From Scyliorhinus canicula (taxonomy: Eukaryota): a stretch of DNA of 64,000 nucleotides. Positions 11,531 through 59,569 of the stretch are shown in pieces. Below the pieces are notes generated by a model that had not been told where the DNA came from, searched no databases, and saw nothing but the letters and a program-made list of their open reading frames with translations. The DNA is taken from assembly GCF_902713615.1 (NCBI RefSeq), contig NC_052158.1:13636546-13700545 (forward strand), read 5' to 3'. Each line of letters starts with the position of its first letter. Within the stretch, counting starts at the first letter, position 1. The position numbers and the translations under genes were made by a program.

Positions 11531-11541
11531 TCAATTCAAAC
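11531..11541 (-). CDS. Gene A candidate terminal coding exon (A|GT TTG AAT TGA, S-L-N-stop); an alternative acceptor at 11342 gives T-K-L-F-N-V-P-W...
   Basis: Acceptor gtgattccccacag, 80-nt intron, phase 1 matches; cannot choose between the two acceptors. Confidence 0.4.
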
Positions 11542-11621
11542 CTGTGGGGAATCACTTTGCTTTCTCAGGTTTCTACTTGATTGCTTGCAGAATTATCCAA
11601 AATCACACCTGTGCAACTCAC

Positions 11622-11652
11622 TGCAATTGCCCACATCTTCCAGTTCCAAGCC
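11622..11652 (-). CDS. Gene A cytoplasmic micro-exon (GLELEDVGNC, 31 nt, phase 0 to 1)
   Basis: Acceptor tttcttctactttaaaag, donor A|gtgagt; completes YT|GL with the preceding exon. Confidence 0.7.
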
Positions 11653-11745
11653 CTTTTAAAGTAGAAGAAATCCAATTATTTTAGACACTTGTGTTAGAAA
11701 AGGCTTGCTTTAATTTATTCCGGACGTTCTGCAAATATACTTTAC

Positions 11746-11798
11746 CGTGTATGTACATTCCACTTGCGAGTGACGGCCGGTTTTATTCTGTGAGACAT
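11746..11798 (-). CDS. Gene A cytoplasmic exon (DVSQNKTGRHSQVECTYT, 53 nt, phase 1 to 0)
   Basis: Acceptor ttatttcttcgctcacag, donor ACG|gtaaag, open and in phase with the TM exon. Confidence 0.72.
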
Positions 11799-12049
11799 CT
11801 GTGAGCGAAGAAATAAACTTGTAAAATTGAATTCCCAAATAATTTATTTAGTGTTGGGACTTTAATAATGTACATCGATGATTGATTCGCCTCCCACTAA
11901 TAAGCAGAAGCCATTCCTTCCAATTGATGATGTGATTATTAGCATATCGCCACATGCCAGTTCTGTGGTTGATAGGGTTGTCCTCAAAATGTTATCAGTT
12001 GACAATTTCTACAAACATCACAATGGAGGTCAGGTTATTATAGGTGTAA

Positions 12050-12650
12050 TGTTTCATGGTATCAAAATGATTTTTTACAGGTAAAGGATGGTCACTTTTA
12101 ACGTTTATTAGAAGGGAATGGTATATATATATATTTATTTTGCAGCTGGACAAGGTCTTGGTGAGTCCACATCTGGAGTATTATGTTTAGTTTCGGATCC
12201 TTTGTTTGAGAAATAAATATGCAACTGCACGAAAAGATTGACACATTCCTGGGAGCAAGGGCTTATTTGAAGAAAGCTTAACAGGTTTGGCCTATACCTT
12301 AAGGGGATTTGATATGGTCGATGCAGAGGATGTTTCCTCGTACTGGGATAGAAGAACTAGAGGTCATAATTTAAGAATAAGAGATCTCCCCGTTTAAGAG
12401 GGGCTAAGAAGGATATTGTTTTCATCTAAGCGGGTCATTAGGGTGTGGAATTCTCTTCTCCAGAAATCAGTTAATTTCATTCAGTGTTGAGTTCGACATA
12501 TTTTTGGCAGACAAGGGAACTCAGAATTATGGGGGGGGGGCGGGGGGGTTGGGCAGGCGGGAATGCGGAGTTAAGGCCACGATCTGGTCAGTCATAATCT
12601 TACCGAATGGCGGAGCAGGCTCAAAGGGCCGAGTGGCCCAATGGTCCTAG
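12050..12650 (+). mobile_element. Highly degraded CR1 3' fragment
   Basis: cacatctggagtatt..., agaactagaggtcataatttaagaataag, ggagcaggctcaaagggccgagtggcc. Confidence 0.7.
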
Positions 12651-12839
12651 ATGCTGCTCCCCTTTTAAATCAGAATGGCGAGGGATATACGTGCTCAATA
12701 TATTCTGGTCAGTCTAAACTCAATGATGAGAACACTACGAGCACTATATTGACGTTAGGCGTGATAATGACAGAAATGAACCATGATACAATGCATAACC
12801 ATTAACGGTGGACAGAGATCTACTTACAGGAATACATAC

Positions 12840-12968
12840 CATCGCATTTCGATTTCAATTTGCATGCTAGTATTATCATGTGTACAATAACTAGGAAGAT
12901 TATTATTTTCCAAAATATAGGTATTAAAGCATTTGCGGGCTCCAGGCAATTTGATTCCTTTATCCTTG
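12840..12968 (-). CDS. Gene A stalk/transmembrane exon: PRIKESNCLEPANALIPIFWKIIIFLVIVHMIILACKLKSKCD
   Basis: Strong acceptor ctttatttttatcttttcag, donor G|gtatgt, 129 nt, phase 1 to 1, ~23-aa hydrophobic run containing Lys, basic stop-transfer KLKSK. Confidence 0.85.
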
Positions 12969-13866
12969 CTGAAAAGATAAAAATAAAGTGTTTTTGCTTC
13001 TATGATTAGGTTCATACTAAAGAACAATAAGAGCAATAATAATTGCCCGCCACAAGATAGTTAAATTTCCGCCCGCTGCATCATTGGTGAGGTTACAGCA
13101 ATTTAACTCTGTCGCTACCGATTACAGTCAACACTCTCCGAGCATCAACAAATGATATGAGAGCTGTGTTCCTTCCAGTACAGTGTCTTAGCGGGACCGA
13201 GTGCGCAGTGATCTGGACACTCTACTCTTTTCATTGGATTAAAGCCAGCTTTGTGAAGCATGCATTTGTGAACGTTGGAAGTATTGAATAGTGAGCTTTA
13301 TGGCATGTTGACCGAACGGAAACCATGAGGAGGCAGAATATTATAAACATCATAACACTTGAGTTACGTAATATTCTTATTGTAAGAAAGCATTGCTCTC
13401 GATGCAATGTATGTGATAGTAGTGGTGTTTAGGCGGTTGCAAATGTAACCATCACGTAGGAAAAGGACCAAATTGGAATTTACTGAAGAGCTCTATTATG
13501 CTGACTTTGTGCTGGTTATATCACATCACGCAATGGCAGCGCAAGTCACTTGTGTGTGAAATGCCGCTGCCGGTTACTCAAGGCCCTTCATTTATCGCCA
13601 ACAATTTAAGGCGGATATTAAAATTTCGTCAAATTAACGTTGCGCCGTCTTATTTTCAGGCATCTTTTCTCTCCTTAGATCACTCAGGTGGAGGACTACA
13701 CTGTATTCCGCGGAACATCTCAAATGGTTGCATCAACATTGGAATAGCAAGCGGTAAACTACTTAAACGTTAGTTAGAACAGAGAAAACGGGATCGCAAC
13801 AATCTGACACGTGTACAAATAGCGCAGTTTTATTTTACGAAGCACGTGTTTATGTTTATTACTTAC

Positions 13867-14205
13867 GCTTCACTTGTAAATGGGTACCATTTCCACCCCT
13901 CTCTTCTGTTCCCATCAATGATACATGACAGTAATAGGTATCTGAGTCTGCCCCAACCAAGTCGGAGATATTAATGAATATTCTGTTGTTGGCAAATGAC
14001 TCGCTGTCTGATCTCTCCAGCCGATTTTTATAAAATGGGCTATTGTCCAGCTTGTAGCCACCTGGTTTCCCCCGTGTCCAGCGAGCTGCCCCGAAAAGCG
14101 AATGGTTTCCTCCAAAGCCCAAGGCACAGTTCAGTGTCACCGACTCCCCCTCTGCTGCCGTTATAAAAGGGGGAAACTGGTAAACGGTGAAATTCATCTT
14201 TGCAC
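13867..14205 (-). CDS. Gene A V-type Ig exon, NKp30/NCR3-like (VJ-type domain)
   Basis: 339 nt, phase 1 to 1, acceptor cctttcattag, donor C|gtaagt; B-strand Cys, C-strand Trp, DSDTYYC and germline J-like GNGTHLQV; layout recalls NKp30 (VxQxP..EGxSxxLxC..W..RL..YxC..GNGTxLxV). Confidence 0.92.
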
Positions 14206-15236
14206 CTAATGAAAGGCGGAAAAGTGACTTTTTAAAAAGCAGCCTCGTAATTTCCGTTAGAAAATGTAACTATAATTTTACATTATAAGGGTGCAGAGGA
14301 AAACGAATTAGCGGGTGCTGAAACGCATACACAATACAGAGACAGAATGTGGTATGAATATTACAAATCACTGAAGATCTGATGGAGTGAATGGTGAACA
14401 TAATGCATCCTTACTTTGCCGCGCTTCGCTGTCTTATCTTCTGTACTGATACTAACTTGAGATCACAAAGTAGGTAGTCGAATGCGTTGTTTAAATGAAG
14501 CAACTTTCATTTAAAAATAAATAAGGAAGTTTAACAAGAAAAGTAACTCAGCAGAATAGTAGTGACAGCAATAACTATGAAAACAGGAGCACTGGTAAAA
14601 ATAGGTCTGGCTTACAGGTCACCCTCTTGCAGACTGAGAAGCCTGCCCAGGCCTGCACATGCTCAGTAACCTCAATAGACCGCCACTAATACAACGACAT
14701 AACAGATAGGCTTAGATGAGCTTATTTATTATAAGAATAATCTGCACTCAAAATGACACTCTTTAACATGTACCAAGAGCGAAAATGAAATAATAGATCC
14801 ATAGCACTAGGCACAAATGCCTTGCCCAGGAGTGTAATGGGACACACTCCAACTGCCTGAACGAGTGTCGCTCCAACAGCACTGATGAACTTTGACAACA
14901 TCCAGGACAAACAACCCGCTTGGTTTGGCACACCCTTCCACAAACATTCGCTCCCTCCACCACTGGCACACAGTAACACCATGGTGTAACATCAGAAATG
15001 TAACTGCAGGAACTCACCAAGGTTCACCAGGGAACATCCCAGGAAGAGCAGCAAATCAGGAAATGAAAGGGAGGCAAGAAATCAAGGAAAATATCATCAC
15101 CAGGGCTGTGGGACTGAGGCAATTGTTGGAGCTGCGGGCTGACAAGTTCTCTGAACTTGGTGGATTGCATCTCAAATGAAGTGACTAAGTCAATGTGCTG
15201 GTTTAAATTTTCCAAAATGTCCTAAATTCGAAGAAG

Positions 15237-15574
15237 GGGCAGCACGGTAGCATGGTGGTTAGCATAAATGCTTCACAGCTCCAGGGTCCCAGGTTCGATT
15301 CCCGGCTGGGTCACTGTCTGTGTGGAGTCTGCACGTCCTCCCCGTGTGTGTGTGGGTTTTCTCTGGGTGCTCCGGTTTCTTCCCACAGTCCAAAGATGTA
15401 CGGGTTAGGTGGATTGGCCGTGCTAAATTGCCCGCGTAGTGTCCTAAAAAGTAAGGTTAAGGGGGGTTGTTGGGTTACGGGTATCGGGTGGATACGTGGG
15501 TTTGAGTAAGGTGATCATTGCTCGGCACAACATCGAGGGCCGAAGGGCCTGTTCTGTGCTGTACTGTTCTATGT
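15237..15574 (+). mobile_element. tRNA-derived HE1/V-SINE-like SINE
   Basis: gggcagcacggtagcatggtggttagc...ggttcgattccc head, gggtgctccggtttc core, CR1-like gggccgaagggcctgtt...ttctatgt tail. Confidence 0.92.
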
Positions 15575-15786
15575 AAGGTTGCATTAGGTAGTAAAGCAGC
15601 CAATGTAACTCCATTATCCAACAATGGAGTGCAACAGTGATCAGGAAACTATATGCCTGTTAGCCTAACATTTGTCATCGGTAAAGTGTCGGAAGCTATT
15701 CTTACATAAGTTATAGCAGGTCACTTGGAAAAATTCACGTCAATCAAACAGAGTCAAAGAAAAATTATATTTAATTAGTTGGAGTT

Positions 15787-16685: not shown

Positions 16686-16688
16686 TGC

Positions 16689-17035
16689 GGGCAGCACGGT
16701 AGCGTAGTGGTTAGCACGGTTTCTTCACAGTTCCGGGGTCCCAGGTTCGATTTTCCGCTTGGGTGACTGTCTATGCGGAATCTGCACATTCTTCCCGTGT
16801 GTGCGTGGGTTTCCTTCGGGTGCTCCGGTTTCCTCGCACAGCCCAAAGATGTGCAGGTTAGGTGGATTGGCAATGATAAATTGCAGTTAGTGTCCAAAAA
16901 GGTTGGGTGGGGTTGCTAGGTTACGGGGATGGGGGTGGAGACATGGGCTTAAGTGGAGTGCTCTTTCCAAGAGCCGGTGCAGACTCGATGGGTCGAATGG
17001 CCTCCTCCTGCACTGTAAATTCTATGATTCTATGA
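16689..17035 (+). mobile_element. HE1/V-SINE-like SINE
   Basis: Same head/core; attctatgattctatga tail. Confidence 0.9.
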
Positions 17036-19795: not shown

Positions 19796-19836
19796 TGCGT
19801 ATTTGCGTTTACAACACCTTAAGTAGTGCATTCGCC

Positions 19837-19843: not shown

Positions 19844-20227
19844 GACTGGAATCCTTTTCGAAATTCGAACTGGGTGTCAAATGTTAATTTTATTTGTATC
19901 AATTGCATATTTAGAATTACGGAGTCTTATAAAGTTAACAGCGACCGCAAGTTAACTACATCTTTACATAGTAAGAGTTGTCTAATTCAAGTATAATGTT
20001 GTACGGCACCGAGTGGTATAGATAGTACAATACAAAATAACGAAGAGTATGTGTTGACTAACCAGTAGTTTGCAGAAAGAAAATCAGATGTATCAGATTC
20101 ATTTGCAGAATTGGAATCACCTTTGATGAACACGCAGAAGGAGAGAGTACATGCAATGATGCTTAAGACAACACTCTCAATATCTAGGGAGTTGACTACA
20201 GCAATGACATGATTTGTGGGCGTTGCC

Positions 20228-22028: not shown

Positions 22029-22245
22029 AGTTTTACACTATTTTCTCCTCAGATTTCCAAAATCTGCAGTATTTTGATTTCAATTTGCAAATAATCTCAA
22101 GATTGTTATCTCGCCCCCTGTCATCTTAACTTAAATATTTAGGAAGGTCATGATAAACAGTGTTGAAGGTTACGGCTTTCACCGTTGCCATAATGGCCAA
22201 GGGTCATTTAACTTAATTAGCATGGTACAATAACACTTAGCAAGT

Positions 22246-22470: not shown

Positions 22471-23320
22471 ATGGTTCGGACTCGAAGTGGGGCGAGGAGA
22501 AAAACGGCAGCAGCTCCACTGGAAAAGCGGGGGAAGGTGGACAAAATGACAGCCGGTGGAGTCCCTGAGGACTGGAGGCAGTGGGCTGAGGAGCAGCAGG
22601 CGCCCCTTCTGCGCTATTTCACAGAGCTGAAAGGTGAGTTGTTGGAATCCCTGAAGGTGACGACGAGTAAGCTACTGGAGACCCAGACAACCCAGGGTGC
22701 AGCGATACTCGAGTTTCAGCAGCAGGCCTCTGAGCGCGAGGAGGAGGTTTCGGCCCTCGTGGGGAAGGTGGAGATACACGAGGCATTTCATAAAAAGTGG
22801 CAAGATCGGTTCGAGGAGATGGAGCTTCGATCACGGAGGAAGAACCTGCGGATCCTGGGCCTCGAGGAGGGGCTGGAGGGGTCGGACCTACCGGCCTATG
22901 TGGCCGTGATGTTGAACTCGCTGGTGGGGGCAGGATCCTTCCATCTGCCCCGGAGCTGGAGGGGGCCCATAGAGTGCTGGCCACGCGGCCGAAGGCAAAT
23001 GAACCCCCGCGGGCGGTGCTGGTGCGTTTCCATCAGTTCAGTGACCGGGAGTGTGATCTCCGATCGGCCAAGAAGGTGAGGAGTAGTAAGTGGGAGAATT
23101 CGGTAGTGCGTATCTACCAGGACTGGAGTGCGGAGGTGGCGAAGCACCGGGTTTAACCGGATGAAGGCAGTGCTCCATAGAAAGCAGGTGAAGTTCGGCA
23201 TGTTGCCGCCTGCGCGCCTGTGGGTCACCTACAAGGACCAGCATCACTACTTTGAGTCCCTGGAGGAAGCGTGGGCCTTTGTGCAGGCTCAAAAGCTGGA
23301 CTCGAACAAGCGATTGGGGG
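22471..23320 (+). pseudogene. L1-type ORF1p (coiled coil + RRM + CTD), frameshifted
   Basis: RSRRKNLRILGLEEG, PRAVLVRFHQFSDRE, FGMLPPARLWVTY split across three frames. Confidence 0.88.
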
Positions 23321-23929
23321 CTGAGGGAGTTTTTCTATTCTATTCATGTATCATTGTTTATGCTGTAGCGGGTTATTCTGTTTGTTTTTGTTTTCTCTCT
23401 CGCTTTCGGATGATGTGGGTTATGGTTCTGTGTTCTAAGGGGGGTACTGGGGTTTGTGGTTGATCTGGGTCTTTGTTTGTACAGAGTTGGTGGTTGGGTT
23501 GGGACTGCGGTCTGGGAGCTGCATTGGTGGGGTGGGGCAGTGTGAATGCGTGGGCTTATCTCTGGTTTCCCGCGCTGCGGGATGAGGGAGTGGAGCTGGT
23601 GGCGAGGGGCATGGTTATTAGACCGGGTTTCCAGCGTTGAAGGGTGCCCAGGAGCTGATGTAGGGGAGGAGGGGGGACCTCATATTGGGAGGGGTCAGAG
23701 TTAGAGTGGGAGCTGCCGGGGTCAGCAGAAGTCAGCTGGCTCACGGGAGCACAGTGGAGGGAGAGTCGCAGCTAGGAGGGGTCCTAGCCAGGGGGGGGAT
23801 ACCGGGTTGCTGCTGGATTGGCCAGGGAGGAGTTCGGGGGGTCGGGGTGAGGTTCTATCGCCGTGGGAAACGGGCCGAAGGGGTAATGGCCAGGGGCGAG
23901 CACTCGATGGGTTATGGCCAGTCGATGGG

Positions 23930-26900
23930 GGAGGGGGGGCGGGGTGCCCCCTGATCCGGCTGATTACGTGGAATGTGAGGGGGTTGAATGGGCTGGTTAA
24001 GCGGGCCTGGGTGTTTTCGCATCTGAAGGGGCTGAAGGTGGATGTGGCCATGCTCCAGGAGACCCACCTGAAGGTGGCGGACCAGGTCCGTCTGAGAAAG
24101 GGGTGGGTGGGGCAGGCTTTCCACTCAGGGCTCGACTCGAAGAACCGAGGGGTGGCGACCCTGGTGGGGAAGAGGGTGGCATTTGAGGCATCTGAGGTTG
24201 TGGCCGATAGTGGCGGCAGATATGTGATGGTGAGCGGTAAGCTGCAGGGGGAGAGGGTGGTGTTGGTTAATGTGTACACCCCAAATTGGGATGATGCTGG
24301 TTTCATGAGGCGTATGTTGGGCCGCATTCCTGGGCTGGAGGTGGGGGGCTTGATCATGGGGGGGGGGGGGGGGGACTTCAATACGGTTCTGGATCCCCTA
24401 CTGGATCGTTCTAGTTCAAGGGCAGGCAGGAGGCCAGCGGCGGCTAAGGTATTGAGGGGGTTTATGGACCAGATGGGAGGAGTAGATCCCTGGAGGTTTG
24501 GGAGGCCGAAGGCTCGGGAGTACTCTTTTTTCTCCCATGTGCACAGGTTTTATGTCTACATTGATTTCTTTGTTTTGAGCAGGGGATTGGTCCCGAGGGT
24601 GGAGGAGGCCGAATATTCGGCTATCGCGATTTCGGACCATGCTCCGCATTGGGTGGATCTGGAGATGGGGAGGCATGGGACCAGCGCCCACTTTGGAGTC
24701 TGGACGTGGGGTTGTAGGCTGATGAGGAGGTGTGTAGGATGGTTTGGGGATGTATCGAGAGGTACTTCGAGGTCAATGATACTGGGGAGTTCCAGGTGGG
24801 GATTGTGTGGGAGGCTCTGAAGGCAGTGATTAGGGGGCAGCTGATCTCCATCCGAGCCCATAGGGAGAGGGGGAGAGGAGGGAGAGGGAGAGACTGGTGG
24901 AGGAGCTGTTGAGTGTGGATAGGAGGTACGCGGAGGCCCCGGAGGAGGGATTGCTGGGGGAACGGCGTAGCTTGCAGGCCAAGTTTGATTTATTGACCAC
25001 CAGAAAGGCAGAGACACAGTGGAGGAAGGCGCAGGGAGCGGTCTATGAGTATGGAGAGAAGGTGCACCACCTGCGTAAGCGGGACGCGGCTAGAGAGATT
25101 GGTGGAGTGAAAAATCGAGATGGGAATGTGGTGCGGCAGGGGGCAGAGGTCAATGAGGTCTTTAGGGACTTCTACAGGGAACTGTACCGGTCGGAGCTGC
25201 CGGCGGTGGGAGGGGGAATGGAGAATTTTTTGGACAGGCTGCGAATTCCAAGGGTGCAGGAGGAGCAGGTGGAGGGACTGGGGGCACCGATCAAGTTGGA
25301 GGACCTGGTCAGTGGGATTGGCCACATGCAGTCGGGGAAGGCGCCGGGACCGGATGGGTTCCCGGTTGAAATTTATAAGAAATATGCAGACCTGCTGGGC
25401 CCCCTGTTGGTCAGGACCTTTAACGAGGCATGGGAGGGGGGTGTTCCACCCACGACGATGTCTCGGGCACTAATCTCCCTGATCCTGAAGCGTGATAAGG
25501 ACCCCTTGCAGTGCGGTTCATACAGGCCAATTTCACTGCTGAATGTAGACGCCAAGTTGCTGACGAAGATCTTGGCCACTAGAATAGAGGACTGTGTGCC
25601 AGGGGTGATACATGAAGATCAGACGGGTTTTGTGAAGGGGAGGCAGCTGAACACAAACTTGCGAAGGATGCTAAATGTGATAATGATGCCAGCAGCAGAA
25701 GGAGAGGTGGAGATTGTGGTGGCATTGGATGCAGAGAAGGCCTTTGACAGGGTTGAGTGGGGGTACTTGTGGGAGGTGTTGGAGAGGTTCAGGTTTGGGG
25801 TGGGGTTTATTAAATGGGTGAGGTTGCTGTACAAGGCCCCGATGGCGAGTGTAGCGACAAATGGGAGGAGGTCTGAGTACTTCAGGCTCCACCGTGGGAC
25901 GAGGCAGGGGTGCCCCCTGTCCCCCATGCTTTTTGCGCTGGCAATAGAGCCTCTTGCCATGGCTCTCAGGGAGTCAAAGGGGTGGAAGGGTTTGGTGCGA
26001 GGTGGGGAGGAGCACCGTGTGTCGCTGTATGCGGACGACTTGCTGTTGTATGTAGCAGACCGGGTGGGGGGAATGCCGGATGTGATGGAGATTCTTGCTG
26101 AGTTCGGGAGTTTCTCGGGATATAAATTGAACCTGGGCAAGAGTGAGCTGTTTGTCGTACACCCAGGAGATCAGGATGAGGGAATTGGTACGCTCCCGCT
26201 AAAGAGGGCAGTGAGGAGTTTTAGGTACCTGGGGGTTCAGGTGGATAGGAGCTGGGGGATGCACAAGCCCAATTTTACTAGGTTGGTGGAGCAGATGGAG
26301 GAGGAATTTAAAAGGTGGGACATGCTGCCATTGTCATTGGCGGGTAGCGTACAGTCCGTTAAAATGGCGGTGCTCCCGAGGTTTTTGTTTTTGTTTCAGT
26401 GCCTCCCCATTTTCGTTCCAAGTGCCATTTTTAGGAGGGTGAACAGCAGCATTCTGGGATTTGTTTGGGCGCATGGGACTCCGAGGGTAAGGAGGGTCTT
26501 TTTGGAGTGGGGCAGGGATAGAGGGGGGCTGGCACTGCCCAACATCTCTGGGTACTATTGGGCGGCTAATATGTCGATGGTATGCAAGTGGGTAATGGAG
26601 TGGGCAGCATGGAAAAGGATGGAGATGGCGTCCTGGGGGGGCACGATTCTGAAGGCACTGGTAACGGCTCCGTTGCTGCTCCCTCCAACGAGGTACACCA
26701 CGAGCCCGGTGGTGGCGGCCACCCTCAAAATTTGGGAGCAGTGGAGGCAACACAGGGCAGAAGTGGGGGGCTCGGTGGAGGCCCCGCTGTGGGGGAACCA
26801 CCGGTTTTTCCCAGGGAACATGGATGGCAGGTTCCTGGGGTGGCACAAGGCGGGCATTAGGAAGTTCGGAGACCTGTTTATTGACGGGAGGTTCGCAAGC

Positions 26901-27695
26901 CTTGGTGAACTGGAGGAGAAGTTTGAGCTCCCCCGGGGAATATGTTCAGGTACCTTCAGGTCAAGGCGCTTGCTAGCCGACAGGTGGAGGGGTTCCCTTT
27001 CCTGCCCCCGGGGGGGGGGGGTAAGGGATAGGGTGCTTTCGGGGGTGTGGGTCGGGGATGGGAAGGTGTCTGACATCTACCAGGTAATGCAGGAAGTGGG
27101 GGAGGCGTCGGTAGAGGAGCTGAAGGCTAAGTGGGAGGTGGAGCTGGGGGAGCAGATTGAGGAGGGGACATGGGTGGACGCCCTGGAGAGGGTGAACTCC
27201 TCCTCTTCATGTGCGAGGCTTAGTCTCATCCAGTTCAAGGTGCTGCACCGGGCCCACATGTCCGGATCTAAGATGAGTAGGTTCTTTGGGGGTGAAGACA
27301 TGTGCGTCAGGTGTTCGGGGAGTCCAGTGAACCATGCCCATATGTTCTGGGCATGCCCGGCACTGGAGGAGTTCTGGAAGGGCGTGGCAGGGACAGTGTC
27401 GAGGGTGGTGGGATCCAGGGTCAAGCCAGGCTGGGAACTCGCGATATTTGGGGTTGGGGTGGAGCCGGGAGTGCAGGAGGCGAAAGTGGCCGATGTCTTG
27501 GCCTTTGCATCCCTAGTAGCCCGGCGGAGGATCTTGCTGCAGTGGAAAGATGCGAGACCTCCGCGTGTGGAGACCTGGATCAATGGCATGGCGGGATTCA
27601 TTAAGCTGGAGAGGGTTAAATTTGCCCTGAGGGGGTCGGTACAAGGGTTCTTTAGGCGGTGGCAGCTTTTCCTCGACTTTCTGGCTCAACGATAA
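23930..27695 (+). pseudogene. L1-type ORF2p (APE endonuclease, RT, Cys-rich C-terminus); frameshifts near 24700-24900, then 932 open codons
   Basis: LITWNVRGLN, MLQETH, GGDFNTVLD, SDHAP; LDAEKAFDRVEW, QGCPLSP, YADDLLL; CVRCSGSPVNHAHMFWAC. Confidence 0.93.
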
Positions 27696-30099: not shown

Positions 30100-30400
30100 G
30101 TAGAATCCCTATAGTGCAGAAGGAGGCCATTCGGCCCATCGTGTCTGCACCAATCCATGTCTCACCCTATCCTTGCAAACCCATAATCTCACATTCACAT
30201 CCCTGGGCACTAACGGCAAATTTATCACGGCCAATCCACCTACCCCGTACATCTTTGGAATGTGCGAGGAAACGGAAGCAATCGGAGGTAACCCACACAG
30301 AAACAGACACATACAAACTCCACACAGACAGGCACCTGAGGCCGGGATTGAACCCGGGTCCGTGGCGCTGTGAGGCAGCAGTGTGCTACCGTGCCGCCCC
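30100..30400 (-). mobile_element. HE1/V-SINE-like SINE
   Basis: catagagtagaatccctatagtgcagaaggaggccattcggccc...accgtgccgcccc. Confidence 0.88.
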
Positions 30401-38812: not shown

Positions 38813-39635
38813 ACGAAATTGGTTTTAATTGGCGATCCCATAATTTTAAACACTAACGTCCAGTTCTAGATTCTCCAACAGGAGGAAACATCCGCGCCAC
38901 ATCCACCCAGTGAAGAAGAATCAAGATGTTAAAGTATGCGTGAAAATGAGGTAATTCAGATCAGGGCAGCCATTGAAATTATGTATTTTATGTGTGCGCA
39001 TCAAATAATTACTTGCGCCTTATTTTTCCGGAAGTCTCTGAATTCCATAGCGGCAGGAGGTGTTCCAGGCTGGGAGAACGCTGTTTAAATCGGCGTTTCC
39101 TTTTTTGAGTGTAGATGCGGACAGCCGTTAAAAAAAACCTAAATCCACGCAAATTCACGCCTGAAATAATTATCTCAGAAGTTAGAAAGTTAGAGCGAGC
39201 TTTCCCTGTTTCTGCACCCAAACCTTTCGAATCAGTGAGGACAGCAGTTAATCGCGATAGTCAACTGCACAAACTGGGAAATACGCTCACAATTGATATT
39301 CACATTCAGTAACCACTGCTTGGGCCATGCTCGCTTCAGCCTCATACTGCAAACATGTACCCTGAGATACATTCACTTGAGTTGCAAACACTTCAATGAT
39401 CATGATTTCTAAAGAAACACAGACGTTTTTCCTTGTACAGCAGAAAATCCCTGAGGGTATCTGGTGTCCATTACATTAAAGCCTCCTGGACTGACACATG
39501 AGTAGTATTACAACTGGATCTGCAGTTGTACAGAATGGAATTTTGTGTCTGAAATGAATGTCTGAAGCTGCGAAAACAATTAGGAACTCTTCACAAATGA
39601 AAAAAAACATCAATAGTAGATGTACCTTTTCGATT

Positions 39636-39962
39636 CATAGAATTTACAGTGCAGAAGGAGGCTATTCGGCCCATCGAGTCTGCACCGGCTCTTTGAAAGA
39701 GCACCCTACCCATGCCCATACCTCCACCCTATCCCCATAACCCAGTTACCCCATCCAACGCTAAGGTCAATTTAGCATGGCCAATCCACCTAACCTGCAC
39801 ATCTTTGGACTGTGGGAGGAAACCGGAGCACCCGGAGGAATCCCACGCAGACACGGGGAGAACGTGCAGACTCCGCACAGACAGTGAACCAAGCCGGGAA
39901 TCGAACCTGGGATCCTGGAGCTGTGAAGCAATTGTGCTAACCACCATGCTACCGTGCTGCCC
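39636..39962 (-). mobile_element. HE1/V-SINE-like SINE
   Basis: Complete head, core and tail ending accatgctaccgtgctgccc. Confidence 0.92.
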
Positions 39963-44485: not shown

Positions 44486-46495
44486 CATCTGTACTCTTTG
44501 GTAAGTTGGTTCTTCCTGTTAATTAGTACCAAGCTTCTCTGTAGGTTCAAGCCCCATTGCCGTAATTAAATCTACAATCTAGGGAGAAGAAAAACCCGAA
44601 AATGCTGGAAAAGCTCAGAACCAGCATCTGTGAGAACAAATCACACAATTAATGTTTCAAGTCCAATGTGACACTGCATCAGAACTAGCAGACTGACCGT
44701 AATCTAGGAGAACCTTTAGTGAAGTACTGCGCGAGGTGAAACTCCTCAGATCAAGTATTAAAACGGGTGTAAGTGAAATATCCCAGAACAGGCACTTCCT
44801 TCAGTATTTCAATATTAAATACTAATATCTTCCAACATATACCTGAATCAACATAATCAGAGCAATGCAATACATAAATATTCGACCCATGTGCAGTGTC
44901 GTATTATATGGAATAATTAGCAGCAACGATTATACTTCAGATATTATTAATTGATTATGAATCAATTTCCAATATCATGGAAACCCTAATGTGACTGTGT
45001 GTAGCAACCTTGTTTATTTAAGCACGCAACACCTTTATCCTAAATTGTATAACGGGCTTTACATTAAAACTGTCCGCAGTAGCTCATTCCACACCTTAAT
45101 AGTCCTTTGCTCGAAAACACACTGCTATGTTTTTTAGACTGCCTTAGGATCGTCTACGCCAATAAATGCAGGTCAGTTTAAATTTCCTATCGTATTTACG
45201 TTATTTAATTATTTATATACCACTCCCTGAATCTCAGATGCAACCTTACATTAGCACCATCATGCCTTTCCATATTTATGTTAATCACTGCACTCTACTC
45301 TATTTGCCAAACAAGGCTTTTCTTTCTTCAGACTTTATCCAACAAAAATAATGTTCCGGTTGCCGGGATTGATTTTTCCCGCAGGCAGCACAACCCTACC
45401 AGCGGGTTTCCGGCGGCGTCGGGTGGTAACAATGGGATATCCCCATTGACAATCGTCGGCAAGATAGAATCCCGCTACCAGCGAACGGTGCCCGACCGAG
45501 GAATACGCGGCTGGCGAAACGCAGAATCCTCTCCTCTGAGCATTCAATGGAATTCCCGTCAGTAAATCAGCCATTCTTAACAAATTGAGGGTTACCATTG
45601 ACCAAAACACGATACTGGGCCAGCGATGTCAAATCTGTGGCTCCAAAAGCAGGTCAGCGGCTGGAAACACTTAGTACATCAATCGCGTTCTGACCCCCAA
45701 AATCCAGTCCACCATGGACAAGGCACAAGTCAGGAATGTGATGGAATGCTCTCAACCTGTCAGGATAAAGAAGATTAACAACATTCAAGAACCACCTACA
45801 TCTTCCCCTCTAGTCTCAACCACTCAACAGCTGACCTGCAAATCCATGGTCCATCCTGCACAGCCGTTGTGCCAAACTTCTTGAACTCCTTCCCGATGAC
45901 ATCACATGGACTTCAGCGGTTCAAGTAGGCGGCTCACCGCCACACTGTCGAAGGTAATTAGGGATGGGCAATACGTGCTGGTCTATAACGACGCCGACAT
46001 CCCGTAAACGAAAAGTGAGAAAAATGGAAATCCCAGAATCAGACATTGGATTAATGATTTAAGTCCACTATCACTTTAAAGGCAAATTGTGTATCGCTAT
46101 TTCTCAATTGCCCTTCGTCACTGGTACTCCACTCCGAATGCTATTCTTATTCTATTTTCAGTGTTTGCTCCCGACATAATGGACGTAGATTTATGTAAAC
46201 TTAAATGTGTTGTGCTCTTCATTTTGCAATCCTTTGAATTCTCTTTTACAAAATTAAGATATACAATCACTTGTAATTTTTAGATTTTTAAGAAAAATGT
46301 CGGCTTCGTGCACCATTCATGATCATACATTAGACTGAGAACAAATGTAAATACAGATCCTTGTAAGTGATGATTAAAAGATGTGTTTTTACCTTCACCG
46401 ACGAGACAAATATGGAGGGTTCCCGCAGGTTAACGCCAAGGTATAGGCACACGTTCCCTCAATCCTTAGAACAGATCTTACTGAACAAAAGTTAA

Positions 46496-46842
46496 TCATG
46501 GAATCCCTACAGTGCAGAAATAGCCCATTCGGCCCATCGAGTCTGCGCCGACCCTTCAAATGAGCACTTTGCCCATTTACGAATGTCCACCCCGCCCTAT
46601 CCCTATCCCCGTAACCACATCACATAACCTAAGCTGCACGTCCCTGGACACTAAGGGGAAATTTGGCATAGCCAATCCACCTAACCTGCACATCTTTGGA
46701 CTGTGGAAGGAAACCGGAGCACCAGAAGGGAGTCATCGCAGACACGGGAAGAAGGTGCAAACTCGACAGTCACCCGAGACCAGCATTGAACCCGGGGCCC
46801 TGGCGCTGTGGGATAGCAGTGCTAACCAATGTGCCACCGCCG
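46496..46842 (-). mobile_element. HE1/V-SINE-like SINE
   Basis: catggaatccctacagtgcagaa...gctaaccaatgtgccaccg. Confidence 0.88.
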
Positions 46843-48805: not shown

Positions 48806-48863
48806 ATGGCCTTAAGTCGACAGCTCACTCTCCTGCAGCTAATTCTCGTTGCAACGCACACGG
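48806..48863 (+). CDS. Gene B leader exon (MALSRQLTLLQLILVATHT-G)
   Basis: aagATGG Kozak, hydrophobic signal peptide, phase-1 donor G|gtgagt matching the V exon; possible 5' UTR intron 48552-48802; RUNX-type AACCACA at 48708. Confidence 0.88.
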
Positions 48864-50690: not shown

Positions 50691-51094
50691 TATATTCTAA
50701 ATTGTGAGGGGAGATGCACTGAATCCGCCGAAGAAATTCCGGGGGGTATCTTTCATTAGATTAAAGAAGATGATGGAACGTCGCTGACAGCGAGTGACGG
50801 CTGTAAATGTTTTCCGCCGAGCAGGAGTTACGTCAGGAAAATAATCATTCCGAAGCACGATTATATATTCCGAAATTGAGGTGGGGCACTCTCCAAATTC
50901 AAATCTGTTTATTCATTAATGTAAGGGTGGTTATTATTGTCTAATGGATGTTTTTATATCATTCCCGGGATGTGTGCGGTATTGACTCTTGAATAATGGC
51001 CAAGCGTGGTTGGTGTCCATTTCTTGTTGCATTCGGAATACTTCATAGAGAATGAGGCTCAACAACACAATCAACCATTAAAGTGCTATCAGAA

Positions 51095-51860
51095 GCAAAT
51101 ATTCACCTGGTACCAGAAGCCAATATTAACCTTCACACACACACCAATATTAACCTGACATCACATCGCAACATGAACCTGCCCACACAACCCAACATTA
51201 ACTTGCCAACACAACCCAACATTAATCTGCCAACAGAACCCAACATTAACCTAACGACACAATCTAACATTAACCTCACCAGAAAACCTAATATTAACCT
51301 GCCCACGCAATGAAACATTAACCTGCCCACACAACCAACTTTAACCTGCCCACACAACCCAACATTAACCTGCCAACACAACCCAACATTAACCTGCCCA
51401 CACAACCCAATATTAACCTGCCCACGCAATGGAACATTAACCTGCCAACGCAACCAACTTTAACCTGCCCACACAACCCAACATTAACCTGCCAACACAA
51501 CCCAACATTAATCTGCCCACACAACCCAACATTAACCTGCCCACATAACCCAATATTAACCTGCCCACGCAATGAAACATTAACCTGTCAACGCAACCAA
51601 CTTTAACCTGCCAACACAACCCAACATTAATCTGCCCATACAACATTAACCTGGCAATGCAAAACAACATTAACCTGCCCACACAACCCAACATTAACAT
51701 TCACGCACAACCCAACATTAACCTGCCCACACAACCAAACATTGATCTGCCAACACAACCCAACACAACCTGCCCATACAACGTTAATCTGCACATACAA
51801 CATTAACCTGCCAGTACAATAAACACTCATCTTCCGACACAACCCAACAATAACTTGCCT
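51095..51860. repeat. ~24-bp minisatellite (cccacacaacccaacattaacctg)n in gene B intron
   Basis: About 30 imperfect units read directly. Confidence 0.95.
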
Positions 51861-52050: not shown

Positions 52051-52389
52051 GTGGAAAGATGAATTTCACCGTTTACCAGTTTCCCCCTTTTATAACGGCA
52101 GCAGAGGGGGAGTCCGTGATACTGAAATGTGCCTTGGGCTTTGAAGGAAAACATTCGCTTATCGGAGCAGCTCGCTGGACACGGGGGAAACCAGGTGGCT
52201 ACAAGCTGGACAATAGCCCATTTTATAAAAATCGGCTGGAGAGATCGGACAGCGCGTCAATTGGCAACAACAGAATATTCATTAATATCTCCGACTTGCT
52301 TCAGGATGACTCAGACACCTATTACTGCCACGTATCATTCATGGGAACAGAAGAGAGGTGTGGAAATGGTACCCATCTACATGTGAAGC
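52051..52389 (+). CDS. Gene B V-type Ig exon, NKp30/NCR3-like
   Basis: 339 nt, phase 1 to 1, acceptor tttttttttgtttaccaatag, donor C|gtaagt; 96/110 aa identical to gene A V exon. Confidence 0.93.
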
Positions 52390-52789
52390 GTAAGTGACAA
52401 CTTAGAATAACCAGTTTTGAAAACGTGTTCTAATTGAGCGCAGTGATTCGACAGCCTCGTACCAGCAGACGCTTTGCTTCAATCTGCAGACTGATAAATT
52501 AACCTACCCCACTACACTCCAGGAATCTGGGCACCAAGGATCTGAAAATCATTCAGAGTAGATTATGTCATCATTCTCAAATAGTTTGCACAGAATGTGT
52601 TTGCATTTCTGTCTGGGGAATGGGAAAATAGCTGCACAGGGGCTGACGCAAGACATGTGGAATAGCAGCGGCAGTTCATTGTATAACACAACGGGTATTC
52701 ATTTTGATTGAACTCAGTATATCTGAAGTCCCGTTGAAGTCAGAAAATAGAGCGATATGTGCAACGACTGCCCGATGCAAGAAACCTTA

Positions 52790-53105
52790 ATCTATTCGCA
52801 GTGGTCAGCACTGCTGCGTGACGACGCTAAAGTGCCGGGTTCAATTCTCAACCTTGGCTGACTGTATTCAGTTTTTACATTCTCCCCGTTTCTGACTGGG
52901 ACTCCTCCGGCTGCGCCGGTTTCCTCCCACAATCCAAAGAAGTGCAGATTAGGTGGATTGTCAATGATACATTGCCCCATAGTGTCCAACGTTTGGTGGG
53001 GTTAGAGGGAGAGGGCGGGTAGTGGGTCTAGGTAGGGTGTTCTTTCGGTCGGTCGTTGCAGACTCAATGGGCCGAATGGCCTCGTTCTGCACTGGAGAGA
53101 TTACA
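52790..53105 (+). mobile_element. Older V-SINE-like copy
   Basis: gtggtcagcactgctg...ggtttcctcccacaatccaaaga...gggccgaatggcctc. Confidence 0.82.
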
Positions 53106-53219
53106 TGTACAGTACCAAGCAGGCTGAACTAGGTTGTGACGCTGCTTAGAGTCGAGCAGCTAATCTTTGGATCTAGCGCTGAGCTCGGCGTTGAACATTC
53201 GCCTTTCGGGAACCGCTGA

Positions 53220-54575: not shown

Positions 54576-54624
54576 ATGTAATAGTGGTAGAAGGAGGAAT
54601 CTCGATACTTTCCTTACTTTGGGT

Positions 54625-54945
54625 GGTTAACACTGTTGCCTCACAGCGTCAGAGACCCTGGTTCAATTCCAATCTTGAGTGCCTGTCTGTGTGGAGTTTG
54701 CACATTCTCTCCGTGCCTGCGTGGGTTTCCTTTGGGTGCTCCGGTTTCCTCCCACAGTCCAAACACGGACAGGTTAGGTGGATTGGCCATGCTAAATTGC
54801 CCCTTACTTTCCAAAGGTTAGGTGGGGGTTACCGGTATAGGGCAGGTGAGTGGGCTTAGGTATGGTGCTCTTTCAGATGGTTGGTCAGATTCGATGAGTC
54901 AAATGACCTTCTTCTGCACTATCGGGTTCCATGATTCTATGATTC
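54625..54945 (+). mobile_element. V-SINE-like copy
   Basis: gtggttaacactgttgcctcacagc...ccatgattctatgatt. Confidence 0.85.
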
Positions 54946-56528: not shown

Positions 56529-56648
56529 GCAAAGTTCCGAAGGAAAATAACGAGAATCCTCACCTCATCCTTGGACTGGGAGGCGCCTTAGTATTGTTGG
56601 GTTTAATCGTAATAGTTCTTATAAGTGGACTCACCTGGCAAAACAAAG
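56529..56648 (+). CDS. Gene B stalk/transmembrane exon: RKVPKENNENPHLILGLGGALVLLGLIVIVLISGLTWQNK
   Basis: Acceptor aactccttatttcag, donor G|gtgtgt, 120 nt, phase 1 to 1; uncharged hydrophobic segment. Confidence 0.87.
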
Positions 56649-57399
56649 GTGTGTATCTCTGTCAAACTTGTTTAATTAATATGTTTGCGCTATAGTGCTG
56701 CAACCACTCCCCATGAGAAGCAACTTGGTTAATGCTTCTATGGACTTTGTCAGGATTTCTAGTGTGAACGGAAATCCCATTAGAGGGAACAATTATTTTA
56801 AAACCCACTTAGGAATTGATGTTAGAATCACGGAATGATTCAGAAAGGAGCCATTCGGTCCGCTGTGTCTGCGTCGGCTCCCCGAAGACGCAAATTCCAT
56901 AGTTCCACTACTCGGCCTTCTTCCCATGGACCTGCATATTCTTCCATTTTCAGCTAACAATCCAATTCAATCTTGAATGGCTCGATTAAATCTGCCCCCA
57001 ACCACAATCTCATACAGCACATTCCAGATCCGCACCACTGGCTGCCTGAAAACAAAACATCTTTTTCTCATATGGCGATTCCTTCTTTGGCCAATCACCT
57101 TAAACCTGTGCGCTTTTGTTCTCAATGCTTCCACCAATGGAAACAGTTTTCCTGATGCACTCTTCACAGGCCAGTCGTGATTTTGATTAACTGTCAAATC
57201 TCCTCTGAACATTCTCTTCAAGGACAACTGTCCCGCTTCCCCAATCAATCTACCGAACTGAAATGTATTACCCCATTATATGAAGAAGGAAATATCCACA
57301 CGCTCATTGTGCTCAGATTCATCTGTACAGGCATCAGAATCCTGTCTCTCCTGTGTGAATGTTAAAGATAAGTTTAAGATATTTTAATAAGCAGTAGAG

Positions 57400-57845
57400 G
57401 GCGGCTCGGTGAAACAGTGGTTAGCACTGCTGCCTCACAGCTCCAAGATCCCGGGTTCAATTCCAACTTCGGGTGACTCTCTGTGTGGAGTTTGCACTTT
57501 TTTCCCAGTGTGTCTGCGTGGGTTTCCTCCGGGTGCTCCGGTTTCCTCCCACGGTCCAAAGATGTGCAGGTTAGGTGGATTGGCCATGATAAATTGCCCC
57601 TTAGTTTAAAAAAGATTCACGTGAGGAAGGAGCAGTGCTCCGTAAGCTCGTGTTTGAAACAAACCTGTTGGACTTTAACCTGGTGTTGTAAGACGTCTTA
57701 CTGTAAAAATGGTGAGCATGGGTTACTGGTTTTCGGGGATAGGGTGGAGGGGTGGGCTTAAGTCGGGTGGCCTTTCCAAGGGCCGGTGCGGACTCAATGG
57801 GCCGAATGGCCTCCTCCATGTAGATTCTGTAGATTCTATGATTAT
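57400..57845 (+). mobile_element. V-SINE-like copy with a nested Penelope-type fragment (about 57620-57705)
   Basis: SINE head/core, then gaggaaggagcagtgctccgtaagctcgtg...ggactttaacctggtgttgtaagac, then SINE tail. Confidence 0.82.
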
Positions 57846-57907
57846 TTGATTCACGATGTTGTTAGCTTCAAACAATTATAGTAACATCTATATTATTTTT
57901 CTTTCAG

Positions 57908-57926
57908 TTATCCTGAGATTGAACAG
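57908..57926 (+). CDS. Gene B cytoplasmic micro-exon 1 (VILRLNR, 19 nt, phase 1 to 2)
   Basis: Acceptor attatttttctttcag, donor CAG|gtacag. Confidence 0.7.
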
Positions 57927-58017
57927 GTACAGAAAATGTAAACTATTATAAAATTGCTGAATATTCTGAACAAAATGTACTGAATTTTAAATTCAAAAAT
58001 ATTTTTGCTTCATACAG

Positions 58018-58046
58018 ACATTCCATTGTAACCAATGCGACAGATG
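58018..58046 (+). CDS. Gene B cytoplasmic micro-exon 2 (HSIVTNATD, 29 nt, phase 2 to 1)
   Basis: Acceptor tttttgcttcatacag, donor G|gtacgt. Confidence 0.7.
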
Positions 58047-58237
58047 GTACGTGAACTTTATGTATTCTGCATTAATTATTATTTCTGGCTAATTAAAAAC
58101 GATCTAAAGATGGAAATTCACATGCAGTTTCATTCAAATAAACGATACGCATTCCTCCTATTACATGTGTTTGTGTGTGTCTGTTATGTATGTGGCACTG
58201 TATAGCTCTGACCAATCTCTGAATTTTATTTCCACAG

Positions 58238-58266
58238 CACCAGCCAATCTACAGCCAGCTACACAA
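58238..58266 (+). CDS. Gene B cytoplasmic micro-exon 3 (APANLQPATQ, 29 nt, phase 1 to 0)
   Basis: Acceptor aattttatttccacag, donor CAA|gtaaga. Confidence 0.7.
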
Positions 58267-58582
58267 GTAAGAGCAATTGGATAATGAGATGTTTGCTATG
58301 TGCAGTGCTAAATGGTTCTGGTGAACAATAGCTTGCTGATAATGCGCCTGACGTTATTTCCAGCGATGGATTTGCTCTATGCTCCACCCGGTTTCAATAT
58401 CCTGAATGTGACTGTGAAGTGCTGATTCTATTGCATAAACACAACAAAATAGAAGTGCTTATGCAATCCTGTAAAATTAAGCTAGTAGTAATCACAATCA
58501 ATAATGATCCATAAGACGATGTGTCGTTCATCACTTCTAGCCCAGACTAATGGGGTAAAATGGTCCTCTCTGTTTTTACATG

Positions 58583-58775
58583 ATGTGGAGATGTCGGCGT
58601 TGAACTGGGGTGAGCACAGTAAGAAGTCTTACAACACCATGTTCAAGTGCCAAGGCTTGTTTCAAAACACTAGCTTTCGGAGCATTTCGCCTGAGGAAGG
58701 AGCAGTGCTCCTAAAGCTAGTGATTTGAAACAAACCTGTTGGACTTGAACCTGATGTTGTAAGACGTCTTTCTGT
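58583..58775. mobile_element. Short palindromic Penelope-type fragment, same family as 43963-44485
   Basis: gtaagaagtcttacaacacc...tagctttcggagc followed by its inverse ctgaggaaggagcagtgctcctaaagctagtg...gttgtaagac. Confidence 0.75.
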
Positions 58776-59485
58776 TTTTACACTAAGGGTTGATACCTTC
58801 CGAATGGACATTGACCCACAAGATTCAAACTGTTCCACAATAGGTACAGGACAGCTTTGAATTGAGTAGAGGAAAATTCGCCTTTCAGGTCATTATACAG
58901 TACGAGCTGGAAATACTGAAATGAAATGAAAAGAAAATTGCTTATTGTCACGAGTAGGTTTCAATGAAGTTACTGTGAAAAGCCCCTAGTCGCCACATTT
59001 CCGGCGCCTGTTCTGGAGGCTGTTACGGGAATCGAACCGTGCTGCTGGCCTGCTTGGTCTACTTTCAAAGCCAGCGATTTAGCCCTGTGCTAAACAGCCC
59101 CATCTGGTCATGCAATGGATGTGATTGCGGCAATGTGCACCATTTGGGTAATATTAACGTTTGTCATTCTATGAACAAACATTTACAATGTGTGGTGGTG
59201 TACAAAGACACACCTTAATGTGATGACTTTTCCCTTTTTATCTTGCACAATTTTCCTGATAATACTTTACCGAGTTTCTAATACGGTAACTCCTTGAAAT
59301 TGTATTTTTTTTTAAATAACTTGTGTCTGCTGTCTTTCTAACCAATGCAAACTTAACAATTTCCCATTCCAGTTAATCGCTCAGCGGTTCCCGCTTTCAT
59401 AACTTTATGCTTGAGGGGATATATGACAAGCGACAGGATGAATTGTGTATTGCCAGGTGTGACTTGCCATCTTAAATTCTCAAAG

Positions 59486-59569
59486 GCTCCCCTTTCCTCT
59501 GCAAAAGCGATTCACTATTCCAGAGTCATTCTGAAACATATCAACAACTGCATTCGCTTTTGTCTGTGA
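59486..59569 (+). CDS. Gene B candidate terminal exon with ITIM (…AIHYSRVILKHINNCIRFCL*)
   Basis: Acceptors at 59486 (phase 0, fits micro-exon 3) and 59508 (phase 1, stronger pyrimidine tract) both read IHYSRV. Confidence 0.55.
   Translation, partial: APLSSAKAIHYSRVILKHINNCIRFCL

What the first reader, a model, noticed from the sequence alone, without database searches (positions are those of the whole stretch)
11531..59569. Candidate paired activating/inhibitory NKp30-like receptor system in a cartilaginous fish
Seen: two 339-nt V exons (14 aa differences over 110 residues) on opposite strands. Gene A splices in phase to a TM with Lys (IFWKIIIF) and a tail with YTGL; gene B splices to an uncharged TM and a tail that can end in IHYSRV. 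Established: a basic TM residue recruits acidic adaptors (FcRgamma, CD3zeta, DAP12); I/V/L/S-x-Y-x-x-L/V is the ITIM; near-identical ectodomains with opposite signalling define paired receptors (KIR, LILR, PILR, CD300). Mammalian NKp30 is a single activating gene. Inference: this is a paired NKp30-like system, with a third disabled member between them. Whether it is already annotated cannot be checked here.
Basis: partly seen in the sequence, partly recalled or inferred. Interest (0 to 1): 0.88.

Follow-up and report, generated by a model that had tools for sequence, protein, structure and literature searches.

The report
Catshark NKp30-like receptor gene pair
Two neighbouring small-spotted catshark genes of the already described shark NKp30 (NCR3) family share a near-identical binding domain; one is an annotated inhibitory-type receptor and the other an unannotated, weakly expressed activating-type receptor, which is plausible but ordinary for NK-receptor families.

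Summary
The core observation holds. Two intact 339-nt VJ-type V exons lie on opposite strands (14205-13867 minus, 52051-52389 plus), 87.5% identical in protein, in Scyliorhinus canicula. They belong to the NCR3/NKp30 family.

Gene B is NCBI LOC119976539, annotated but unnamed. It reads leader, V, uncharged TM, then a tail with one ITIM (VQYAKV) in a last exon about 1.9 kb past the window.

Gene A has no annotated product. One spliced contig from a public run joins its V exon to the Lys-bearing TM exon exactly at the predicted GT..AG sites. It carries 3 mismatches in 117 nt, so it is an allele or a close paralog. Three raw-read RNA runs show no expression. Canonical splicing gives a short tail (…CTYTV*), not YTGL. 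The leader is unresolved.

No third member lies between the genes; that region is transposon debris.

Only the V exon is shared (dS 0.11, flanking introns unalignable), which suggests exon-limited conversion. Sharks also have a separate conserved Lys-TM NCR3-like subtype, already annotated.

Verdict: a plausible activating/inhibitory pair, and a new member of a known kind. Other first-reader notes of this scan flag similar NKp30-like clusters nearby in this genome.

The parts
13867..14205 (-). Gene A V exon (VJ-type V-set domain, 339 nt, phase 1 to phase 1)
   Evidence: The ORF is intact, with acceptor ag|GT and donor C|gtaagt. Pfam V-set E 3.6e-10. Best PDB match is NCR3. An A-type contig covers 13867-13983.
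12840..12968 (-). Gene A stalk/TM exon encoding PRIKESNCLEPANALIPIFWKIIIFLVIVHMIILACKLKSKCD, with a Lys in the TM. An alternative in-phase donor lies at 12828.
   Evidence: Polypyrimidine tract then cag| acceptor, and G|gtatgt donor. The contig joint 13867->12968 has GT..AG ends on the minus strand, with 34 nt on this exon. Best 19-aa hydropathy window 2.7.
11746..11798 (-). Candidate cytoplasmic exon of gene A (DVSQNKTGRHSQVECTYT), unverified
   Evidence: Good acceptor and gtaaag donor, phase-compatible with the TM exon. No read or contig support.
11531..11541 (-). It gives V* or GLN*, not YTGL.
20063..20102 (-). Candidate leader exon of gene A (MNLIHLIFFLQTT + G, donor gttagt, phase 1), unverified
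   Evidence: Its similarity to gene B's leader is not above chance.
48806..48863 (+). Gene B leader exon (MALSRQLTLLQLILVATHT + G)
   Evidence: Exact match to P0001/P0005.
52051..52389 (+). Gene B V exon (339 nt)
   Evidence: Identical to the V domain of LOC119976539 X1/X2.
56529..56648 (+). Gene B stalk/TM exon (uncharged TM, LILGLGGALVLLGLIVIVLISGL). It is skipped in isoform X2.
57908..57926 (+). Gene B cytoplasmic exon (VILRLN)
   Evidence: The exon chain reproduces P0005 with GT..AG introns.
58018..58046 (+). Gene B cytoplasmic exon (RHSIVTNATD)
58238..58266 (+). Gene B cytoplasmic exon (APANLQPATQ). The last coding exon, carrying VQYAKV, lies about 1.9 kb beyond base 64000.
   Evidence: The gene span on record is 17,153 nt.

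Best explanation
The window holds two members of the shark NCR3 (NKp30) multigene family in Scyliorhinus canicula, arranged tail-to-tail, about 38 kb apart.

Gene B (LOC119976539) is an inhibitory-type receptor. It has one VJ-type V domain, an uncharged TM and a cytoplasmic tail with one ITIM (VQYAKV). It has lost the family's second, more conserved motif (VEYATI) to a stop codon. By analogy with other ITIM receptors, it would recruit SH2 phosphatases once phosphorylated (inferred).

Gene A is an unannotated activating-type counterpart. Its V exon belongs to the same V subtype (87.5% aa identity) and is spliced to an unrelated TM exon that places a Lys (and a His) in the membrane span. This is followed by a short tail with no ITIM or ITAM under any canonical splicing model. 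By analogy with NKp30, KIR2DS and similar receptors, the Lys would pair with an acidic ITAM adaptor (inferred).

Only the V exon is shared between the two genes, so the ectodomains were probably kept alike by exon-limited gene conversion, or by transfer of the exon into a different gene body (inferred). The 14 residue differences include homologs of three human NKp30 contacts with B7-H6, so the two receptors may bind a common ligand with different affinity (speculative).
For: - Species and gene B identity: the V domain is identical to XP_038673032, and the exon chain reproduces isoform X1.
- NCR3 family: NCR3 is the best single-domain PDB match, E 4e-9 for the single sequence and 60 bits against 51.5 for SIRP-alpha with the profile. 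The shark relatives are named NCR3 or NCR3-like.
- Gene B's ITIM is conserved across sharks as xxYAKV plus xEYATI.
- Gene A's V->Lys-TM junction is seen in a spliced contig at exactly the predicted GT..AG sites. The exon is in phase and hydrophobic.
- Every canonical tail model for A is short and lacks a motif.
- Gene A's V lies inside the otherwise inhibitory I-type clade.
- The similarity is limited to the exon: 93% over 351 nt, dS 0.107, with the 600-nt intron flanks at shuffle level.
- F35I, F68I and A69G map to human NKp30 Ile50, Phe85 and Leu86.
Against: - Transcript support for gene A is one 151-nt contig at depth 2.6, with 3 mismatches in 117 nt. It could come from an A-type paralog elsewhere in the cluster.
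- Three raw-read RNA runs of unknown tissue show zero depth on A's exons, and no indexed RNA run holds the TM exon.
- No annotated protein carries A's V domain.
- A's leader and tail are unresolved.
- A's TM exon has no significant similarity to the conserved Lys-TM subtype of sharks, and its conservation in other species could not be tested.
- Gene B has lost one of its two tyrosine motifs.
- No adaptor, phosphatase or ligand data exist.
Confidence: 0.55

Rival explanations
1. Gene A is a marginal or decaying gene. An I-type V exon copy sits upstream of a fortuitous hydrophobic ORF, is spliced at low level, and produces no functional receptor. Only gene B is a working receptor.
For: No annotated product. 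Zero depth in three raw-read RNA runs, and no RNA holder of the TM exon. No identifiable leader above chance. The TM exon has no detectable homolog in any annotated shark protein.
Against: The V ORF is intact, with all canonical V-set and J-motif residues and intact splice sites. dN/dS of 0.62 is below neutrality. The TM exon has strong acceptor and donor sites in the correct phase, and a contig shows the exact junction.
Confidence: 0.25
2. A and B are simply two diverged members of a large NCR3 cluster with different ligands and expression. They are not a functional pair, and the resemblance of their V exons reflects common descent within the Scyliorhinus I-type lineage.
For: In the tree, A's V branches outside the group (S. 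torazame I-type + B + LOC119976781) rather than as B's nearest relative. B's closest relative is another inhibitory gene, P0006. The A/B differences fall in loop positions, including homologs of ligand contacts. Many other NKp30-like genes are noted nearby.
Against: dS of only 0.107 alongside unalignable introns argues for continued sequence exchange limited to the V exon. 87.5% ectodomain identity is within the range of accepted paired receptors (own knowledge).
Confidence: 0.15
3. Gene A encodes a short-tailed decoy or co-receptor. Its Lys sits at the membrane interface and does not recruit an ITAM adaptor.
For: The Lys lies in the outer third of the span, next to a Trp. The tail is short and carries no motif.
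Against: Excluding the Lys leaves only about 15 hydrophobic residues, too few for a membrane span. A basic residue in this position is the usual adaptor-pairing feature in NKp30, NKp46 and LILRA (own knowledge).
Confidence: 0.05

Closest known systems
Shark NCR3 (NKp30) family, as described for nurse shark (Kinlein et al. 2021, Immunogenetics 73:333; GenBank MT914154-MT914161) and annotated as 'NCR3-like' in several shark genomes
   Same: A single non-rearranging VJ-type V domain in one exon, with the GNGTxLxV motif. Gene B's V, TM and tail align along their whole length with nurse shark NCR3 (P0009) and with Mustelus, Chiloscyllium and Heptranchias proteins.
   Different: Gene A combines the I-type V with a Lys-bearing TM exon that is found in no annotated family member retrieved here. 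The paper itself could not be read, so what it says about signalling motifs comes from my memory only.
Conserved shark Lys-TM NCR3-like subtype (Heterodontus XP_067865594, S. torazame scyTo_0001108, Cetorhinus, Mustelus, S. canicula LOC119975616)
   Same: A stalk Cys, a Lys in the outer part of the TM, an 'AC..K.K' stop-transfer at the same spacing, and a short tail without tyrosine motifs.
   Different: Its V domain is only about 42% identical to A and B and forms a separate clade. The TM similarity to gene A is not significant.
Human NKp30 (NCR3)
   Same: The V-domain fold family and J-like motif. It is the best solved-structure match. It has a basic TM residue, like gene A.
   Different: It is a single gene in mammals, with Arg rather than Lys and no ITIM-bearing paralog. 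Sequence identity is only about 30%. MHC linkage and B7H6 binding were not tested here.
Paired activating/inhibitory IgSF receptors (KIR2DL/2DS, SIRP-alpha/beta, PILR-alpha/beta, LILRB/LILRA, CD300)
   Same: Highly similar ectodomains. One member has an uncharged TM plus an ITIM, and the other a basic TM residue plus a short tail. Sequence exchange is limited to the ectodomain exons.
   Different: The V family is different. Function is entirely inferred, and expression of the activating-type member is barely documented.

Membership tests
NCR3/NKp30 family | A single non-rearranging VJ-type V-set domain encoded by one phase-1/phase-1 exon with a G-x-G-T-x-L-x-V J-like motif | tested here: met
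   Both exons are 339 nt with the motif GNGTHL(Q/H)V, the canonical Cys/Trp/DxxxYxC residues, and a Pfam V-set hit.
NCR3/NKp30 family | The V domain is closer to NCR3 than to other V-set families | tested here: met
   With phmmer, NCR3 scores E 3.6e-9 against 7e-7 for the next match. With the profile, NCR3 scores 60 bits against 51.5 for SIRP-alpha, the next single-domain hit.
NCR3/NKp30 family | Groups with shark proteins named NCR3 | tested here: met
   The nurse shark NCR3 protein (P0009) and NCR3-like annotations fall in the same clade, with 98/98 support for the I-type clade.
NCR3/NKp30 family | A basic residue in the TM for ITAM-adaptor coupling (as in mammalian NKp30) | tested here: inconclusive
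   Gene A has a Lys in its span. Gene B has none. Adaptor coupling cannot be tested here.
NCR3/NKp30 family | Linkage to the MHC | not tested
   The chromosome position was not obtainable, because no coordinates or DNA were returned.
NCR3/NKp30 family | Binding of a B7H6-type ligand | not testable with these tools
   There is only a homology mapping of the A/B differences onto human contact residues.
Paired activating/inhibitory receptors | Near-identical ectodomains in two linked genes | tested here: met
   87.5% aa and 92.9% nt identity. The genes lie 38 kb apart on opposite strands.
Paired activating/inhibitory receptors | The inhibitory member has an uncharged TM and a cytoplasmic ITIM | tested here: met
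Isoform X1 carries VQYAKV, encoded outside the window.
Paired activating/inhibitory receptors | The activating member has a basic TM residue and a short motif-less tail, and is expressed | tested here: inconclusive
   The junction to the Lys-TM exon is seen in one low-depth contig with 3 mismatches. The tail models are short. Three RNA runs show no expression.
Paired activating/inhibitory receptors | Opposite signalling (adaptor versus SHP recruitment) and a shared or related ligand | not testable with these tools
   This needs biochemistry.

The most novel reading that the evidence does not exclude
Gene A would be an activating-type NCR3 receptor that arose inside the otherwise inhibitory I-type lineage. 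It would have done so by coupling an I-type V exon to an unrelated Lys-bearing TM exon, with the ectodomain then kept similar to its inhibitory neighbour by exon-limited gene conversion. That would show that the 'activating receptor born from an inhibitory one' mode of paired NK-receptor evolution already operates in cartilaginous fish, on the one NK receptor family conserved from sharks to humans.
Probability: 0.35. Interest if true: 0.55.

Novelty: new member of a known kind. Interest (0 to 1): 0.36.

Why it matters
NKp30 is the one NK receptor traceable across jawed vertebrates, and in mammals it is a single activating gene. A documented activating/inhibitory pair sharing one ectodomain in a shark would give an accessible system for two questions: whether paired recognition, and possibly pathogen-driven decoy evolution, is ancestral for this family, and which adaptors a shark Lys-TM receptor uses.

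As it stands, the practical value is an annotation improvement (an unannotated gene A and the corrected tail of gene B), plus a clear example of exon-restricted sequence sharing.

Tried and rejected
- **First read-laying run.** Gene B could therefore not be checked with reads, and the IHYSRV exon could only be judged against the annotated isoforms.
- **RNA run search with gene A's V exon.** It returned shares of 0.11-0.28, which equals the 27% of 31-mers that A shares with B. Those holders are explained by B-type transcripts, apart from the single A-type contig in X3.
- **Run search with the TM exon.** It found only DNA runs.
- **Gene A's leader.** Two weak protein hits pointed to 20102-20063, but the nucleotide similarity to B's leader is at chance level. 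The stretch with low-depth X3 contigs (14382-14649) holds no ATG-led leader.
- **Homology of A's TM exon to the K-type TM.** BLASTP gave E 8.9. A profile ranked it 4th of 1,660 ORF pieces at 4.2 bits. It was rejected as evidence and kept only as a resemblance in layout.
- **The 19-nt match of A's TM exon end at 22071-22089.** It has no donor site and no hydrophobic stretch, so it is a chance match.
- **ITAM and acidic-TM scan of 20-32 kb.** Nothing credible was found.
- **DNA for gene B's full locus and for the S. torazame ortholog.** None was served, so the last exon of B and conservation of A's TM exon could not be examined.
- **Primary papers.** Kinlein 2021, Flajnik 2012 and Ohta & Flajnik 2015 are not held. 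Citing papers gave no detail on shark NCR3 signalling motifs.
- **Structure prediction.** It was not run, because V-set folds are too alike to discriminate further.
Full report
**What is there**

The window is Scyliorhinus canicula. The V domain of the plus-strand gene is identical to NCBI XP_038673032 (LOC119976539 isoform X2), and its exon chain reproduces isoform X1 (P0005, 235 aa) with GT..AG at every intron.

Two intact V-type ORFs lie at 13859-14197 (minus) and 52059-52397 (plus). The exons proper are 14205-13867 and 52051-52389. Each is 339 nt, with an ag|GT acceptor, a C|gtaagt donor and phase 1 at both ends. They differ at 24 nt and 14 of 112 residues.

**Family**

Pfam calls both domains V-set. 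Against all solved structures, the best matches are the four NKp30 (NCR3) entries at E about 4e-9, roughly 100-fold better than antibody or TCR V domains.

A profile of 15 shark V domains keeps NCR3 as the best single-domain match, at 60 bits against 51.5 for SIRP-alpha.

The relatives retrieved are shark proteins named NCR3 or NCR3-like, including a nurse shark entry. Published nurse shark NCR3 genes carry accessions MT914154-MT914161 (PMC12227049). They were described by Kinlein et al. 2021, as cited in PMC10450919. That paper is not held, so its content is known to me only from memory.

**Gene B**

The exons are:
- leader, 48806-48863
- V, 52051-52389
- uncharged TM, 56529-56648
- three small cytoplasmic exons, 57908-57926, 58018-58046 and 58238-58266

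The remaining 36 residues (HSIRGSDEDDSVQYAKV...RHVE*) are not in the window. The gene spans 17,153 nt on record, so it ends about 1.96 kb past base 64000.

VQYAKV fits the ITIM consensus. The paralog LOC119976781 and the orthologs in Mustelus, Chiloscyllium, Heptranchias and nurse shark continue into a second motif, xEYATI. Gene B loses this motif to a stop.

Isoform X2 skips the TM exon.

I could not test it with reads.

**Gene A**

No protein in the 5.8-billion-sequence index carries gene A's V domain, so the gene appears to be unannotated.

Downstream of the V exon, by 898 nt, lies an exon with a polypyrimidine tract then cag| acceptor. It is in phase with the V exon and encodes PRIKESNCLEPANALIPIFWKIIIFLVIVHMIILACKLKSKCD. 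Its donor is G|gtatgt at 12840, and a second in-phase donor lies at 12828.

- RNA runs found with the V exon held only 0.11-0.28 of its words, which is the fraction (0.27) that A shares with B.
- The TM exon was found only in DNA runs.
- Laying four runs on 11300-15306 at 96% likeness or better gave zero depth on A's exons in three raw-read RNA runs.
- It also gave one 151-nt contig in run X3 (depth 2.6) that joins 13867 to 12968, skipping 898 nt with GT..AG ends on the minus strand. This is exactly the predicted junction.

That contig has 3 mismatches in 117 nt. The two listed mismatches are not gene B letters, and they change G82V and R100K. The contig is therefore A-type, either an allele or a close paralog. 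Since other notes of this scan report further NKp30-like genes 70 kb and 250 kb upstream, a paralog origin cannot be excluded.

**Gene A's ends**

The string TGL occurs only at 11545. A good candidate cytoplasmic exon lies at 11798-11746.

With canonical splice sites the possible products end in ...KCDDVSQNKTGRHSQVECTYTV*...KCDGLN* or, unspliced...KCDGMYSCK*. None contains YTGL, an ITIM or an ITAM, and all are short. None has read support.

A leader candidate at 20102-20063 has the right phase and a good donor, but it is no more similar to B's leader than random sequence.

**No third member**

tblastn with both V domains, and blastn and tblastn with every A and B exon, find no further copy in the window. 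The one 19-nt hit at 22.07 kb has no exon features.

No ITAM, acidic-TM or other adaptor-like ORF stands out between 20 and 32 kb. The interval is dominated by LINE ORFs and SINE copies.

**How A and B relate**

Similarity between the genes covers 351 nt: the exon plus the splice consensus. In the exon, dS is 0.107, dN is 0.066 and dN/dS is 0.62. The 600 nt of intron on each side align no better than shuffled sequence, and the TM exons are unrelated. Synonymous divergence of 10% alongside unalignable introns points to sequence exchange confined to the V exon. That is an inference.

A V-domain tree resolves three shark subtypes:
- I-type: uncharged TM, with a YAKV/EYATI tail
- K-type: Lys in the TM, with a short tail. 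It is conserved in Heterodontus, Cetorhinus, Mustelus, S. torazame and S. canicula LOC119975616.
- L-type: a long tail

Gene A's V is I-type, within the Scyliorhinus subclade (90/85 support), branching outside S. torazame + B + LOC119976781.

Gene A's TM exon resembles the K-type in layout: a stalk Cys, then K, 13 residues, AC, x, x, K, x, K. The similarity is not significant.

**Ligand face**

Through the alignment to human NKp30, the A/B differences F35I, F68I and A69G fall on Ile50, Phe85 and Leu86. These contact B7-H6 and were validated by mutagenesis (PMC3135353). Three hits among 11 contact positions compares with about 1.4 expected by chance, which is not significant.

**Verdict**

The two genes are real NCR3-family members with activating-type (A) and inhibitory-type (B) architecture and a shared ectodomain, so a paired system is a reasonable reading (confidence 0.55).

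The family, gene B and a separate Lys-TM subtype are already known or annotated. Gene A's expression rests on one contig.

This is a new member of a known kind and of moderate interest.

Noticed in passing
beyond window end (~65.8-65.96 kb); proteins P0005 vs P0006: Gene B ends ...RHVE*, whereas its 95%-identical paralog LOC119976781 continues ...RHVEYATIRS.... Gene B has therefore lost the more widely conserved second tyrosine motif of the I-type tail.
   Followed up: partly
window 56529-56648 (skipped exon); P0001: Annotated isoform X2 of gene B skips the TM exon and keeps the reading frame. This predicts a TM-less, possibly secreted form that carries the cytoplasmic sequence.
   Followed up: no
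window 51061-51859: An ~800-bp tandem array ends about 190 nt upstream of gene B's V exon. It shows self-similarity at many offsets, and its minus-strand ORF is full of GCVGRLML-like repeats.
   Followed up: no
window 22471-27695, 33527-35137, 94-2667: Long LINE-type ORFs (endonuclease/reverse-transcriptase-like, up to 932 aa) fill much of the interval between the two receptor genes. The copies at 1060-2756 and 33539-35233 are 86% identical.
   Followed up: no
window 15237-15574, 16689-17030, 30110-30400, 38569-38815, 39635-39963, 46494-46839, 52799-53107, 54623-54942, 57398-57605: At least nine copies of one SINE-like repeat, 70-91% identical, on both strands. They are very highly represented in the RNA runs (depth in the hundreds to thousands at 15186-15306).
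   Followed up: no
window 13899 and 13953 (run X3 contig): The only A-type transcript fragment differs from the reference at two non-synonymous sites (R100K, G82V) in loop positions. This suggests either V-domain polymorphism or another A-type paralog.
   Followed up: partly
proteins P0167 (Mustelus asterias), P0162 (Polypterus): The Mustelus model fuses a K-type NCR3-like gene to an L-type V domain, so the two are probably adjacent genes merged by the annotation. A Polypterus NCR3-like sequence clusters with a 'PRC2A, partial' model, which hints at MHC class III linkage in bichir.
   Followed up: no
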